Positions 17,086 to 38,045 of a DNA stretch of 64,000 nt are shown here, in pieces (position 1 is the stretch's first letter; each line of letters begins with the position of its first letter). The position numbers were made by a program, and so were the translations under genes. The notes under the pieces are model-generated. The model was given only the letters and a program-made list of their open reading frames with translations. It ran no database searches and was not told where the DNA came from. Location: NCBI RefSeq assembly GCF_963853765.1, contig NC_088860.1:14384001-14448000 (forward strand). The letters run 5' to 3'. Source of the DNA: Magallana gigas (taxonomy: Eukaryota).

Positions 17086-17854
17086 CTAACCAGAGTTGTT
17101 GTTGTTCAACAAGATTGGTGTGAGAGCCAAGAGACCTTCAAATGATAATATCGAATGATGAATTATACAATAAATAGATCCAACAAATGGACAGATATTA
17201 CCAGGAGATGGAAAAATTGATAACTGTCCGCAAATATCCTTAGTAACATATTTACTTGTTTTGGAATTGTGTTTAAACATACAGCTAAAAAAAAACTAGT
17301 ATACGTGATTGCAATTCCGTTCTTGATAGTCCTTTTCTTAGTTTCTCAATTTGTATATATTAAGCGGAAAATGAATAAACATTTTATCAAAACATACCCA
17401 AAAGCAGAGCACCGTTTCCTCCAAAGATTCCCTGGTTTGTGGTTTCAGCTCCAACACCCAGACCAAGGGCTGGGAGGGGGAGTGGCTGCTGGACGGGTGC
17501 TTCCACTGGGACTGGGTAAGGGACGTAGACGGATTTCATGGATTTCTTGTGACCATATCCGGATGTACCGTGCCCATATCCGGATGAACCATGTCCGTAT
17601 CCGGATAAACCTTGTCCGTATCCGGACATACCCTGTCCATATCCGCTGATTCCGGTGCTGTATCCATACCCGCTGTCATATCCTCCTGCATATCCTCCAG
17701 TATATCCACTTGTGTATCCACTTTGGTCGTATCCACTTGCGTATCCGCTTGTGTACCCTGATTGATCGTATCCACCGCTGGAATAACCCATGTCGGCACG
17801 GACGAGGGCAACACCGAGAACTAAGAGAGCGGCGACAACGGCTGAGGAATGCAT
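17086..17854 (-). CDS. Secreted Gly/Tyr/Ser-rich low-complexity protein, paralog A (168 aa; shematrin/prisilkin-like composition)
   Basis: Coding exons 17854-17398 and 17135-17086, joined by a phase-1 GT-AG intron. Signal peptide MHSSAVVAALLVLGVALVRA, SGY/GYG repeats, GHKKS hinge, VYVPYPVPV linker, tail GIFGGNGALLLGLLALTPILLNNNNSG*. Non-coding exon 1 ends at 18112; 3' UTR intron 17044-16936; AATAAA at 16868-16863. Confidence 0.88.
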
Positions 17855-18111
17855 CTGTTAAAAAAAAAACCCGGATTTTTTACATTGTATGAACTCAACT
17901 GTTCAGTATATTAAACGTTTTTGTAATTTCGAGGAAATCAAATCTAAATATGCATGAACGACGTATTTCCTTTTTTTTAAGTGGAAACAAAAAAGAAATT
18001 AACTAGAGTTTGCCTAAATTAGCTTAGACATGCAGAATAAAATATCTGTTCTTTAAAAAAAATACATAGAAAAAACGGTTGCTTAGTCCCTTGACTAGGG
18101 ATGTCAATTAC

Positions 18112-18260
18112 CTTGGAAGATCTGTTGGTAGTGATTTGAATCTGATCTAAGCACCTTTTTATACCAAAGAGTGAATGGCGCCTACAGCGGTTACGGTTTT
18201 GCGCGCAACAGCCACACCAACAGTTGTTACTTTGGGCCATGTTGTGTCTACCTGACGTAA
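18112..18260 (-). promoter_or_regulatory. Core promoter and non-coding exon 1 of paralog A
   Basis: TATAAAAA at 18163-18156, donor AAG|GTAATT at 18112/18111, TTACGTCA (sense) at 18260-18253. Confidence 0.7.
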
Positions 18261-18303
18261 TGCGCATGCTCTTAACAAGGAAGTTGATAATATACGTAAG
18301 TTT

Positions 18304-18747
18304 ATTATAGCATTGAATCATGATTTTTTGAAGTATACACTCTCATAACTGCAGCGGTGTGTGCATACAAATTGAGTAACGCGCGTTAGCGCGTTATGAA
18401 AATTTGTATGCACACACCGCTGCAGTTATGAGAGTGTATACTTCAAAAAATCATGATTTAATGCTTATATTTACATTTTTTTTAACTTCTTGCCTTGTCT
18501 GCAAATGTGATTCATACCTTAAAATTCCTATCTTATCCTAAGGGTAAGTTAATATTAATGGAAGAGCCACAGTAACAGCCATAAGCGTGAACTTTGATTT
18601 TCGCTTGTGACGTTGCAGTTTACAGCGTTCAACGTTTGTGACGTCATAATAAAACTCGTCAATTTGACCTTTGACTACTTGTTGCATTTAGAGGCATTTA
18701 AACATCACGGAATTTAATGGAAAAACACAGTAGAATGTAAATATATG
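18304..18747. mobile_element. Foldback Helentron-type insertion in the paralog A promoter, absent from paralog B
   Basis: Near-perfect ~160-bp hairpin (CATGATTTTTTGAAGTATACAC...GTGTATACTTCAAAAAATCATG) and an ATATTTAC/GTAAATAT inverted pair. The duplicated unit has the empty site at ~21750. Confidence 0.85.
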
Positions 18748-35117: not shown

Positions 35118-35325
35118 CTCCTTTATAAGGCCCAACACCAATTTCCGAGGAAAATTGCTACTCAGATCATTTAGTGGTTTTCTGAAATTTTGACCCTTTC
35201 ATATTTTACCCATTTTTCTACTCCTTTATAAGGCTCAACAACAATTTCTGGGGAAAATTGCTAGTCAGATCATTTAGTGGTTTTTCTGAAATTTTGACCC
35301 AATCATATTTCACCCATTTTTCATG
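35118..35325. repeat. Two-copy ~103-bp tandem repeat
   Basis: CTCCTTTATAAGGC...GGAAAATTGCTA.TCAGATCATTTAGTGG...CTGAAATTTTGACCC occurs twice in tandem. Confidence 0.8.
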
Positions 35326-37126
35326 TTTTTACAGCTTTATTGGACCTTTCCCAGCTAATTTCCTGCACCTGTACCACATGCATGGCGTACCTTTACATAT
35401 CAAGAACTTACCGGTGTGTTATTTACTACCAGTTTGTCCCATCCACATACTTTTCGTGTAACTTTACCTCCTTCATTTCACTGTGTAAAGTCAACCAAAT
35501 AGATAAACCCACAGGTTTAGCATCTTGCTTCTGATTGTCATGTACTTAATATTAGGGGTCTATACATAGTGCATACAAATTTTCATGAACAGACATCCCT
35601 TTAACTATAGCTACAGGTCTGTAGCTCCCTGTCTGAAAAAATTCGGATGGACAACCTGGGAGCCCGTTGAAAAAAGTGTATATTTATTGCTAAAAATCTG
35701 CGCTATGTTTGGACTTATTAACTTTACTTATACGCACATTCTGTGAAAACAATTAGTACCATTAAATTCTTCATGCAATTTACTACTGTTATATCATCTC
35801 TTCACTTGACTTCAATCAACATTGTATTACATATTAGGAATTAATTTATGTTTTCTAATTAGAGAAAATATAGTTACTAAAAACGTCATTTATGAATATT
35901 TACATTTTCAAGTGTCTTTGACTAGATTTTGTAATGTACAGTCCAATACACCAATGCCTATTTTGATATTTAATTGTTTTGCTGAAAATTATATGAATTA
36001 ACGAGGAAAACAAGTAGATGTAATTAAAAAAATCCTTCTTTGAATATTATGGGCCAGTGGGGTGATTAAATACCATTTAGTAAGATCGGTGCGATCAAAT
36101 ACATGTAGGTCATAAAGGCCTTCGGGCTTTATTTGATTTTGTATTACTTAGCTAATTTACTCAAAGAATAATGTAATATTTTTTAAATATTCTCGATTGC
36201 AGTAAGGAAAATAAGTTTTTATTGATTTATCAATACTTCATTTTTATTAAATATGTTTATTGGTATCAAAACCGAACCTTCAGTACCCTTTCCTTAAAAT
36301 GAGTTGCTAGTAAGTATATATAACATATTAATAAATATCGCTAAAACAGTGGGGAAAATCTGTGCACATTATGAATACATAAATACTAGTATATAATATT
36401 CCATAAAACTTATAACATTCGTTACACGTAAAAATTAGAGATAATATGATAAAGATATCTTTTACCATGCATAACAGAAAAAGAAAACGATTACAAAACA
36501 TCAGGGCTGTTGACTTGTTTGTGGGTGCGCAAAAACAGTATTAAAACTGAAAATCAAATGAAAAATGAAAATCAACTTTTAATAAAAGTTGTTTTCATTA
36601 CAACTTTGATTTTTATTTTATCATTACTTGAAAATATTTATGAACACACACACACACACGCAAGCACGCACAAAATACTTGCAGTTGTTATTAGAATTTA
36701 GTTTACTGTTTTTGTTGATGATTTATACAGTAAGAAATAAAAGCTTTTGTCAACAAGACATAGAAAGAAGACAAACAGAGATAAGATTAATTTATAGACA
36801 GATAATGAAGTAATGAAAGTTTTGAATAAGAAAGGGTTAATTAATATACACTATGATTATATGTCATGAAAAAATACACATTTGAATAAACAAAACTTAT
36901 TTCATCAATCCTAATTGAATCTCAAATATATTATGTATTAAATTCAATGACCTGATCGCGGCTACAATTTAGACACATTTTTGGATCAAGGTATATTTTA
37001 CAAATCAGTTGATCGAATGGCAATTGCGGAACACTTTGATCAAACCCGATTTTGGACATGGGTAGGAGAGTCGGCAGTCTAGACATTACATGTTCTTCGC
37101 GCGCACCTTCCTTATACCAGGATGTC

Positions 37127-37227
37127 TTACGCCATGTTGTTACGCAATTTACTTCTGGGGATCTACTATAAGAAGGGTGGCGCAGCAATGAATGGCAGTG
37201 CAGTCCAACAGACCTACAGATCGAAAG
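37127..37227 (+). promoter_or_regulatory. Core promoter and non-coding exon 1 of paralog E
   Basis: TTACGCCA at 37127-37134, TTACGCAA at 37140-37147, TATAAGAA at 37167-37174, donor AAG|GTAAGC at 37227/37228. Confidence 0.72.
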
Positions 37228-37464
37228 GTAAGCTTCCACAGAGTAAGCTCACTCTTCATTCACAGTCAATTTTCTTTACAAATATCAGGCCATTTTTATG
37301 TTCCATTGCTATAATCCTGTGGTATATTTGCGTATTTCCTGCTATAAGTCGTGTTTGAGGCAGCTTCACGTTAGCTCTAGTTTCTTATATTATTCATATT
37401 CTTGGTCAATTTATACCGGTAGAACAAGAAAAGATTTTAAATGTCACATTTTGCTGTATTACAG

Positions 37465-38045
37465 ATGCGTTCATTCATCACCATTGCTGTCGTTATGATG
37501 GCCGGCGTTGCCGTGGCCATGGCTGAGGGATACGGTTCCAGCGGATACGGAAGTAGCAGCTACGGAAGTAGCGGTTACGGCTACATGTCTTATCCCACAT
37601 CTGGATCTTACGGATATGGAGGTGGATACGGAAGTGGATATGGATACGGATCTAGCGGATACGAAAGCGGGTACGGAAGCGGATACGGGAGCGGATATGG
37701 AAGTGGATACGGAAAGGGACACGGAAAGAAATCATCCACCCATGTGTATTACCCAGTCCCTGTGCCCGTCCAACAGCCAACCCCTACTCCCCTTCCCCTT
37801 CCACCAATCGGTCTTGGAGCTGGCATCGACGCCGGAAACAACGGTCTGTTCGGAGGCAGCGGCATTGGACTTCTTAGTAAGTAGATTATCAACATGTCAT
37901 CCATGCGTTTATTCTGACTTATATGCTTGCATTAATTCCCTGCATTTAGCAATTAAAGCATCAATTTCAAAATGTTTAATTATCTTTTTCAGTGCTGCTT
38001 TTCCTGATCCCTCTCCTTTTCAACAACAACAATACTTCCGGTTAA
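37465..38045 (+). CDS. Secreted Gly/Tyr/Ser-rich (GSGY-repeat) protein, paralog E (154 aa)
   Basis: Coding exons 37465-37876 and 37993-38045 (phase 1). Close paralog of D with the same tail ([28 protein letters not shown]). AATAAA near 38163. Confidence 0.9.

What the first reader, a model, noticed from the sequence alone, without database searches (positions are those of the whole stretch)
17086..38045. Five-gene cluster of secreted modular Gly/Tyr-rich proteins sharing a family-specific core
Seen in sequence: five paralogs (A, B, C on -, D, E on +). Each has a signal peptide, a variable low-complexity region, a His/Lys hinge (GHKKS, GHGKKS, HGHGGKSGK), a Pro/Val-rich linker (YVPYPVPV..PLPLP), G(L/I)FGG(N/S)G and a shared tail, with the same core exon layout. 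Established knowledge: Gly/Tyr-rich secreted proteins are typical of molluscan shell-matrix, periostracum and adhesive layers, where Tyr can be oxidised to DOPA/quinone by tyrosinase and cross-linked to His/Lys. Inference: this is a co-regulated structural-material gene family whose constant modules, not its GY repeats, define it. I cannot tell whether it is already named.
Basis: partly seen in the sequence, partly recalled or inferred. Interest (0 to 1): 0.82.

Follow-up and report, generated by a model that had tools for sequence, protein, structure and literature searches.

The report
Oyster shell-field Gly/Tyr protein gene cluster
Five neighbouring Pacific oyster genes encode an oyster-only family of small Gly/Tyr-rich proteins; two are published markers of the embryonic shell-forming tissue, and all end in a conserved module that probably tethers them to the cell membrane rather than letting them float free.

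Summary
The window is Magallana (Crassostrea) gigas chromosome OY970752.1. It holds five paralogs (A, B, C on the minus strand; D, E on the plus strand), all with the same three-exon layout.

Each protein has a 20-aa signal peptide, a variable low-complexity region, a basic hinge, a Pro/Val-rich stretch and G(L/I)FGG(N/S)G. A separate tail exon follows.

The genes are already annotated. A is LOC105342064 ('shematrin-like protein 2', later 'prisilkin-39') and B is LOC117689669. A 2025 single-cell study lists both as top markers of gastrula shell-field clusters and used A as its in situ shell-field probe. The shell-formation reading is therefore supported for A and B.

The names reflect composition only. 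The shematrin C-terminal signature is absent. A core profile searched against 1.84 billion proteins found only oyster relatives. There is no Pfam, NCBIfam or PDB match.

With the Gly-rich motif before it, it forms about 20 uncharged residues, followed by NNNN(T)SG. That looks like a membrane anchor (transmembrane, or possibly a GPI signal). 'Secreted' probably means surface-tethered, at least at first.

This is a new variant of a known kind, of moderate interest.

The parts
17086..18163 (-). Gene A (LOC105342064, XP_034327157). TATA box 18154-18163; short non-coding exon 1 ending at 18112; main coding exon 17398-17854; tail exon CDS 17086-17135. Product 168 aa.
   Evidence: P0031:53-220 is identical to the spliced prediction.
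20531..21611 (-). Gene B (LOC117689669, XP_034327156), a tandem duplicate of A. TATA box 21602-21611; exon 1 ends at 21560; main exon 20841-21297; tail exon CDS 20531-20580. Product 168 aa.
   Evidence: (94% DNA identity to A over 2 kb).
26941..27937 (-). Gene C, the divergent paralog with an Asp/Phe-rich then Gly/Met/Ser-rich variable region. TATA box 27928-27937; exon 1 ends at 27883; main exon 27253-27646; tail exon CDS 26941-26996. Product 149 aa.
   Evidence: (NCBI model of 149 aa at this place).
29791..30835 (+). Gene D, head-to-head with C. TATA box 29791-29801; exon 1 ends at 29843; main exon 30254-30662; tail exon CDS 30783-30835. Product 153 aa.
   Evidence: (NCBI model of 153 aa).
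37167..38045 (+). Gene E, a duplicate of D. TATA-like box 37167-37176; exon 1 ends at 37227; main exon 37465-37876; tail exon CDS 37993-38045. Product 154 aa.
   Evidence: (85% DNA identity to D over 985 bp).
17396..17560 (-). Example of the family-specific core in A: basic hinge GYGHKKS, then VYVPYPVPVEAPVQQPLPLP, then GIFGGNG and the start of the apolar stretch. The same module lies at 20839-21003 (B), 27254-27418 (C), 30491-30661 (D) and 37705-37875 (E).

Best explanation
This is a tandem cluster of an oyster-restricted (Ostreidae) gene family. It encodes small, intrinsically disordered proteins made by the embryonic shell field. Each protein has two parts.

The N-terminal part evolves fast and is low-complexity (Gly/Tyr/Ser repeats in A, B, D and E; an acidic block plus Gly/Met/Ser repeats in C).

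The C-terminal part is a conserved delivery-and-anchoring module, made of a basic hinge, a stiff Pro/Val-rich stalk of about 25-30 residues, and an uncharged stretch of about 20 residues. That stretch runs from G(L/I)FGG(N/S)G through the Leu-rich tail exon and is followed by NNNN(T)SG.

Proposed mechanism:
1. The signal peptide takes the chain into the ER.
2. The C-terminal apolar stretch stops transfer and leaves the protein tethered in the apical membrane, as a type I protein with a 6-8 residue cytosolic end. Alternatively it is exchanged for a GPI anchor at the small residues of GG(N/S)G.
3. The stalk holds the repeat domain out into the forming organic shell layer.
4. There the Tyr-rich domain condenses or is oxidatively cross-linked. 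It either couples the first organic shell sheet to the cells or is released by cleavage near the basic hinge.

Shown: family, cluster, gene structure, phyletic range, and shell-field expression of A and B. Inferred: membrane tethering, the stalk role, cross-linking and release.
For: Family and structure:
- Five copies with an identical exon layout.
- Orthologues with the same core and tail in Crassostrea virginica, C. angulata, Saccostrea echinata (A-type and C-type, 7 kb apart, same relative order) and Ostrea edulis.
- An unannotated tail exon sits downstream of a further D-type relative.
- An exhaustive profile search found 9 hits in 1.84e9 representatives. Eight are family members, all oyster where the source names the organism. 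The ninth is a spurious bacterial repeat protein.
- No Pfam, NCBIfam or PDB relative.

Expression:
- LOC105342064 and LOC117689669 are markers of gastrula shell-field clusters SF1 and SF4, detected in about 95-96% of cluster-4 cells.
- HCR with LOC105342064 labels the dorsal shell field (PMC12551290).
- Oyster shell-gland cells are reported to express many very young genes (PMC10396302).

Anchor:
- The tail segment is as hydrophobic as the signal peptide's core.
- There are no charged residues from the invariant Phe to the C-terminus.
- AlphaFold gives only two helices, the signal peptide and residues 148-163; the rest is disordered, with mean pLDDT 48.5.
- The tail exon is the best-conserved module between old paralogs (59-78% identity, dN/dS 0.12-0.25).

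Precedent: EGF-ZP shell matrix proteins combine a signal peptide, a C-terminal transmembrane domain and a basic cleavage site (PMC9290575).
Against: - No dedicated predictor (SignalP, DeepTMHMM, NetGPI) and no experiment was available.
- The strongly hydrophobic core is only 13-14 residues and contains a Pro.
- No basic residues flank it on the would-be cytosolic side.
- The 6-8 polar residues after it are atypical for a GPI signal.
- The Saccostrea A-type tail scores weakly (+1.7).
- The basic hinge is not dibasic in C-type proteins and lacks any Lys/Arg in two relatives (P0046, P0047), so regulated release there is doubtful.
- C, D and E were not mapped to gene identifiers, so their expression is unknown.
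- No tyrosinase appears among the held gastrula markers.
- No member has been reported in a shell proteome in the papers I could search.
Confidence: 0.6

Rival explanations
1. One reading: these are freely secreted structural matrix proteins. The hydrophobic tail would be a self-assembly or propeptide element that is cleaved or buried, not a membrane anchor. The proteins would be deposited directly into the periostracum or larval shell and tanned through Tyr.
For: - Signal peptide, Tyr content of 12-13.5% and a His/Lys hinge.
- Shell-field expression of A and B.
- Tyrosinase is a known shell-gland marker in the trochophore (PMC10396302).
- The hydrophobic core is short and interrupted by Pro.
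- A stop codon follows the splice donor within 2-3 codons in every gene. Intron retention would therefore give a tail-less soluble form.
Against: - A Leu-rich segment of this hydrophobicity at the C-terminus of a translocating chain is expected to stay in the membrane (established knowledge of stop-transfer segments; simple estimate).
- The tail is the most conserved part of the protein, which is hard to explain for a disposable element.
- No shell-proteome identification was found.
Confidence: 0.25
2. They are true orthologues of the pearl-oyster proteins shematrin or Prisilkin-39, as the database names say, and so are already characterised.
For: - NCBI names: 'shematrin-like protein 2', 'prisilkin-39(-like)'.
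- Shared Gly/Tyr/Ser composition, a signal peptide and expression in shell-forming tissue.
Against: - The characteristic shematrin C-terminal signature (RKKKY, RRKKY, RRRKY and variants; PMC3896809) is absent. These proteins end in a hydrophobic stretch plus NNNN(T)SG.
- The core profile found no Pinctada protein in 1.84e9 representatives.
- In the published marker table, the best Swiss-Prot hit of LOC105342064 has E = 0.023, to accession I1S4T3, which I could not identify.
- The name 'prisilkin-39-like' is also given to proteins of cnidarians, locusts, mosquitoes, psyllids and barnacles, which marks it as compositional.
- The names changed between annotation releases.
Confidence: 0.04
3. They are Gly/Tyr-rich peptides with a role unrelated to the shell, such as epithelial defence peptides or a general apical surface coat. 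Their shell-field expression would be incidental.
For: - Small secreted Gly/Tyr-rich peptides act in defence in other invertebrates (my own knowledge).
- C1q-domain genes sit next to the family in Saccostrea and Ostrea.
- Adult tissue expression was not examined.
Against: - Strong and specific expression in shell-field clusters at mid-gastrula, before any immune tissue exists.
- The conserved stalk and hydrophobic tail are not features of such peptides.
- There is no C1q gene in the M. gigas window.
Confidence: 0.06

Closest known systems
Shematrins (Pinctada; Gly/Tyr-rich prismatic-layer framework proteins)
   Same: Signal peptide. Gly/Tyr-rich repetitive low-complexity domain. Multigene family. 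Expressed in shell-forming epithelium. A and B even carry this name in one annotation release.
   Different: No RKKKY-type C-terminal signature. Instead there is a conserved non-repetitive hinge, Pro/Val, GxFGGxG and hydrophobic tail module. No detectable sequence relationship. Found only in Ostreidae. Expression is shown in the embryonic shell field; adult prismatic-layer mantle edge was not examined.
Prisilkin-39 (Pinctada fucata prismatic-layer matrix protein)
   Same: Gly/Tyr/Ser-rich composition, and the current RefSeq name of A and B.
   Different: These proteins are about 13-15 kDa when mature, while Prisilkin-39 is named for about 39 kDa. The core profile finds no Pinctada protein. Chitin binding and aragonite inhibition, which define Prisilkin-39 functionally (PMC7265298), are untested here.
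EGF-ZP shell matrix proteins (for example PfuEGFZP, Lottia LUSP-17)
   Same: Works alike in outline: a signal peptide, an extracellular matrix-interacting part, a basic site, then a C-terminal membrane anchor. These proteins sit on or are shed from shell-forming cells, and their genes lie in tandem clusters (PMC9290575).
   Different: No EGF or ZP domain and no Cys here. The basic hinge is not a canonical furin site. The anchor here has a very short uncharged C-terminal end.
Mammalian high-Gly/Tyr keratin-associated proteins (KAP6) and C. elegans F12A10.7
   Same: Composition only. The automatic names of the Saccostrea and C. virginica orthologues come from them.
   Different: No shared core, no signal-plus-anchor architecture, and no homology shown.

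Membership tests
Shematrin | C-terminal basic signature RKKKY, RRKKY, RRRKY, IRRKK or PRKKY (PMC3896809) | tested here: not met
   All five proteins and all orthologues with a tail end in a Leu-rich stretch plus NNNN(T)SG or a variant. No basic C-terminus.
Shematrin | Signal peptide plus Gly/Tyr repeat domain (GnY followed by a hydrophobic residue) | tested here: inconclusive
   A signal peptide and GY repeats are present in A, B, D and E, but the units are SGYx / SGYGxG rather than GnY-hydrophobic. C lacks GY repeats.
Shematrin / Prisilkin-39 | Detectable sequence homology to the Pinctada founders beyond composition | tested here: not met
   The core profile gave no Pinctada hit in 1.84e9 representatives. 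The published Swiss-Prot best hit for LOC105342064 has E = 0.023, to accession I1S4T3, which I could not identify.
Prisilkin-39 | Chitin binding, inhibition of aragonite precipitation, location in the prismatic layer | not testable with these tools
   These are functional properties (PMC7265298).
Oyster hinge / Pro-Val / GxFGGxG / tail family (defined here) | Signal peptide; basic hinge; VY(x)P(x)PVP...P(L)PL; G(L/I)FGG(N/S)G; separate tail exon with LLxLxPxLL and a polar (S/T)G end; phase-1 intron at the same column | tested here: met
   Met by all five window genes and by relatives from C. virginica, S. echinata and O. edulis.
Type I single-pass membrane protein | Cleavable N-terminal signal peptide plus one apolar stretch of about 20 residues near the C-terminus | tested here: met
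   20 uncharged residues run from the invariant Phe to the last Leu. The hydrophobicity sum is negative in 8 of 9 proteins. AlphaFold gives a helix at 148-163. No dedicated predictor was run.
Type I single-pass membrane protein | Basic residues on the cytosolic flank (positive-inside rule) | tested here: not met
   The C-terminal flank is NNNN(T)SG, with no Lys or Arg.
GPI-anchored protein | Small residues at the attachment site, a short spacer, then a hydrophobic stretch reaching the C-terminus | tested here: inconclusive
   GG(N/S)G offers small residues and the hydrophobic stretch is short and uncharged. However, the spacer is very short or absent, and 6-8 polar residues follow the stretch. 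NetGPI / big-PI were not available.

The most novel reading that the evidence does not exclude
The family is a lineage-specific cell-to-matrix tether. In this reading, membrane-anchored disordered Gly/Tyr proteins on shell-field cells physically couple the very first organic shell sheet to the apical membrane and seal the mineralising space. The conserved anchor-and-stalk module acts as a reusable carrier onto which different repeat 'cargos' have been swapped (Gly/Tyr in A, B, D and E; acidic plus Gly/Met/Ser in C). A soluble form could arise by intron retention or by hinge cleavage.
Probability: 0.15. Interest if true: 0.65.

Novelty: new variant of a known kind. Interest (0 to 1): 0.42.

Why it matters
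Shell-forming cells of molluscs are known to run largely on young, fast-evolving, repetitive genes. These are usually named by composition and treated as interchangeable 'shematrin-like' proteins.

This cluster has a conserved, non-repetitive handle (hinge, stalk, anchor) beneath the repeats. That handle allows true orthologues to be traced across oysters. It also shows that two genes now used as 'shematrin' and 'prisilkin-39' markers in Pacific oyster embryos belong to neither family.

If the tail is a membrane anchor, some of the earliest shell-field products are surface-tethered rather than simply secreted. That bears on how the first organic shell layer stays attached to the cells that build it.

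The Gly/Tyr domains have no Lys or Arg. Trypsin-based shell proteomics would therefore miss them, which may explain why they have not been reported in shell proteomes.

Tried and rejected
- Pfam, NCBIfam and PDB sequence searches gave nothing meaningful. The best were sub-threshold compositional hits.
- AlphaFold gave a disordered model (mean pLDDT 48.5), so no fold search was run.
- The 2759-aa hit P0007 in the profile search is a bacterial repeat protein that matches only a short Pro/Gly stretch. I rejected it as spurious.
- BLASTP between the Saccostrea C-type and Ostrea D-type core-plus-tail found no alignment under compositional adjustment, although both match the profile.
- I looked for synteny with the C1q gene that flanks the family in Saccostrea and Ostrea. 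No C1q gene is in this window. Only one downstream exon (42332-42430) is shared with the Ostrea locus.
- The 52-aa N-terminal extension in the RefSeq model of A is rejected as coding. It contains the TATA box, and the C. virginica model has an unrelated extension.
- The long antisense ORFs over the repeats (for example 17269-17649, 20706-21305, 30291-30707) are rejected as by-products of the repetitive codons.
- Dibasic cleavage at the hinge was considered as a conserved feature and downgraded, because C-type proteins lack it.
- Mapping C, D and E to LOC identifiers was not done.
- Contigs for P0009/P0028 could not be read because the sample file was too large, so their species is unknown.
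Full report
**Origin of the window.**
The window is 100% identical to Magallana (Crassostrea) gigas assembly GCA_963853765.1, record OY970752.1, in reverse orientation. Locus L004 positions 1-21182 equal window 28267-7086, and L005 equals window 31688-10531. It is AT-rich metazoan DNA with many tandem and interspersed repeats.

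**The observation.**
ORF listing and tblastn show five related open reading frames and no others in the 64 kb. Downstream of each main exon I located a canonical GT donor, a short intron and a small tail exon. The spliced coding coordinates are:

| Gene | Strand | Main exon | Tail exon | Product |
|---|---|---|---|---|
| A | - | 17398-17854 | 17086-17135 | 168 aa |
| B | - | 20841-21297 | 20531-20580 | 168 aa |
| C | - | 27253-27646 | 26941-26996 | 149 aa |
| D | + | 30254-30662 | 30783-30835 | 153 aa |
| E | + | 37465-37876 | 37993-38045 | 154 aa |

In all five, an AG acceptor lies immediately before the ATG, so a non-coding first exon must exist upstream. I found it in each gene:

- A TATA box lies 50-60 nt before a GT donor.
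- A: TATA 18154-18163, exon 1 ends at 18112.
- B: TATA 21602-21611, exon 1 ends at 21560.
- C: TATA 27928-27937, exon 1 ends at 27883.
- D: TATA 29791-29801, exon 1 ends at 29843.
- E: TATA-like box 37167-37176, exon 1 ends at 37227.
- A, B, D and E still share CCAACAGA(T/C)C...AAG|GTAA at the exon end.

The exon 1 / exon 2 junction of A and B is confirmed by the RefSeq models. The three-exon layout is therefore common to all five.

**Independent support for the gene models.**
- The annotation of the same assembly calls products of 149 aa at C and 153 aa at D, the lengths I predicted. It and 220 aa at B and A.
- The A and B models equal my spliced proteins plus an N-terminal extension read from exon 1 and the DNA upstream of it.
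- That extension contains the TATA box. It is also replaced by an unrelated extension in the C. virginica model. I therefore take it as an annotation artefact, with the conserved start at the signal peptide.
- RefSeq models from Ostrea edulis and Saccostrea echinata start at the signal peptide and include the tail.

**Protein anatomy.**
Each protein has these modules in order:

1. A 20-residue signal peptide with a small-x-small cleavage site (VRA|D, VNA|Q, AMA|E).
2. A variable low-complexity region.
3. A basic hinge.
4. VY(x)P(x)PVP...P(L)PL.
5. A short Gly-rich linker.
6. G(L/I)FGG(N/S)G.
7. The tail.

A, B, D and E have 26-29% Gly and 12-13.5% Tyr. C has 18% Gly and 6% Tyr, with an Asp/Phe block and then Gly/Met/Ser repeats. 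C-type relatives in other oysters keep this design.

Identity by module between subfamilies is as follows:

- Core: 42-52%.
- Tail exon: 59-78%.
- Variable region of C against the others: 18-26%.
- Synonymous sites are saturated.

A and B are recent tandem duplicates (94% DNA identity over 2 kb). D and E are somewhat older (85% over 985 bp). Both A and B have counterparts in C. angulata.

**What the tail is.**
From the invariant Phe of GxFGGxG to the last Leu there are about 20 residues without a charge. Examples are [20 protein letters not shown] in D and IFGGNGALLLGLLALTPILL in A. NNNN(T)SG and the stop codon follow.

- The Leu-rich core is as hydrophobic as the signal peptide's core. A simple sum of per-residue membrane-insertion free energies is negative in 8 of 9 family proteins.
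- AlphaFold on a six-sequence alignment gives a disordered chain (mean pLDDT 48.5). The only helices are the signal peptide (4-22) and the tail (148-163).
- A segment like this at the C-terminus of a chain that entered the ER through a signal peptide is expected to stay in the membrane.
- The alternative is a GPI signal. The small residues of GG(N/S)G, the short uncharged hydrophobic stretch and the lack of a basic cytosolic flank favour it. The missing spacer and the 6-8 polar residues at the end argue against it.

I could not run dedicated predictors, so the anchor is an inference and its type is open.

**Distribution.**
A profile of the core (alignment A1) was searched against 1.84 billion representative proteins. 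It gave nine hits at E of 0.001 or better.

- Eight are family members.
- The ninth (P0007) is a large bacterial repeat protein that matches only a Pro/Gly stretch.
- Named members come from M. gigas, C. angulata, C. virginica, Saccostrea echinata and Ostrea edulis.
- The rest come from unannotated read assemblies. One of these loci has the tail exon just where expected.
- In Saccostrea, a C-type and an A-type gene lie 7 kb apart in the same relative order as in the window.
- In Ostrea, a single D-type gene shares a downstream exon with the region after E.
- There is no Pfam, NCBIfam or PDB match.

On present data the family is confined to true oysters.

**Names and published expression.**
A is LOC105342064 (XP_034327157). 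It was 'shematrin-like protein 2' in one release and is 'prisilkin-39' in the next. B is LOC117689669 (XP_034327156), 'prisilkin-39-like' and then 'prisilkin-39'. The Saccostrea and C. virginica orthologues are called 'keratin-associated protein 6-2-like' and 'F12A10.7-like'.

The single-cell study of Pacific oyster embryos (PMC12551290) provides the expression evidence:

- It lists both genes among the top markers of gastrula shell-field clusters SF1 (cluster 4) and SF4 (cluster 26).
- It used LOC105342064, under the name shematrin, as an HCR probe. The probe labelled the dorsal shell field.
- Co-markers of cluster 4 include LOC105342070 and LOC105342075. Their numbers are close to that of A, and they may be other members of this cluster. 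I could not verify this.
- A further co-marker is collagen alpha-6(IV), which is the hinge-region shell-gland marker in the trochophore atlas (PMC10396302).
- That atlas also reports that shell-gland cells express many very young genes, which fits an oyster-only family.

**Comparison with the namesakes.**
- Shematrins are recognised by a basic C-terminal signature, RKKKY and variants (PMC3896809). It is absent here.
- The core profile found no pearl-oyster protein.
- The published BLAST column for LOC105342064 shows a best Swiss-Prot hit of E = 0.023, to accession I1S4T3, which I could not identify.
- 'Prisilkin-39-like' is a label also given to Gly/Tyr proteins of cnidarians, insects and barnacles.

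The names are therefore compositional. The closest functional parallel I found is the EGF-ZP shell matrix proteins. They combine a signal peptide, a C-terminal transmembrane domain and a basic cleavage site, and they are thought to sit on or be shed from shell-forming cells (PMC9290575).

**Mechanism and verdict.**
Shown:
- A real, conserved, oyster-restricted five-gene cluster with a common three-exon structure.
- Shell-field expression of two members.

Inferred:
- ER entry followed by C-terminal membrane tethering (transmembrane or GPI).
- A Pro/Val stalk that projects the repeat domain.
- Incorporation of the Tyr-rich domain into the first organic shell layer by condensation or oxidative cross-linking.
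- Possible release near the basic hinge or by intron retention. Every gene has a stop codon 2-3 codons after the splice donor.

Tyrosinase does not appear in the held gastrula marker tables, so cross-linking rests on general chemistry.

The finding is correct and carefully observed, and its shell interpretation holds for A and B. The genes themselves are already annotated and in use as markers. What is new:
- Recognition of the family and its constant module.
- The mis-naming of A and B.
- The probable membrane anchor.

I rate it a new variant of a known kind, of moderate interest.

Noticed in passing
window 18306-18741 (inverted repeat arms 18309-18373 and 18401-18465): A 436-bp insertion is present upstream of A but absent from its duplicate B. 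It carries a 65-nt, 98% complementary inverted repeat and looks like a miniature transposon. It landed about 140 nt upstream of A's TATA box.
   Followed up: partly
window 18112-18267 and 21560-21688 (-): The RefSeq models of A and B begin 52 and 43 codons upstream of the signal peptide, in a stretch that contains the TATA box. The C. virginica model has an unrelated extension. This is probably a start-codon artefact, and it would hide the signal peptide from automated predictors.
   Followed up: yes
window 7086-10622 (+): The neighbouring gene encodes a 251-aa product with DEK_C and SWIB domains, according to the assembly's annotation. It is unrelated to the cluster.
   Followed up: no
window 10840-12109 and 33846-34371: Two arrays of tandem repeats of about 177 bp (and 158 bp), one on each side of the cluster. 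Whether they are the same satellite family was not checked.
   Followed up: no
window 42332-42430 (+): A 33-codon stretch is 58% identical at protein level to a stretch 10 kb downstream of the Ostrea edulis family member. It is probably an exon of a conserved neighbouring gene. No Pfam match.
   Followed up: partly
window 2341-2823 (+): A 160-aa ORF whose sequence resembles the C-terminal part of retrotransposon reverse transcriptases (by eye). It has no Pfam hit at E <= 1.
   Followed up: partly
window 17269-17649, 20706-21305, 30291-30707, 37508-38167 (strand or frame other than the genes'): Long ORFs overlap the repeat regions in other frames or on the opposite strand. They are by-products of the repetitive GGx/TAC codons, not genes.
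   Followed up: yes
Supplementary marker table of PMC12551290, cluster 4: ER peptidyl-prolyl isomerases (FKBP2, FKBP14) and prolyl 4-hydroxylase alpha are co-markers with A and B. This could reflect the load of Pro-rich secretory proteins, or simply collagen IV production.
   Followed up: no
L003:5825-6366 and L001:1873-2759: A C1q-domain gene lies just upstream of the family in both Saccostrea echinata and Ostrea edulis, but not in the M. gigas window.
   Followed up: partly
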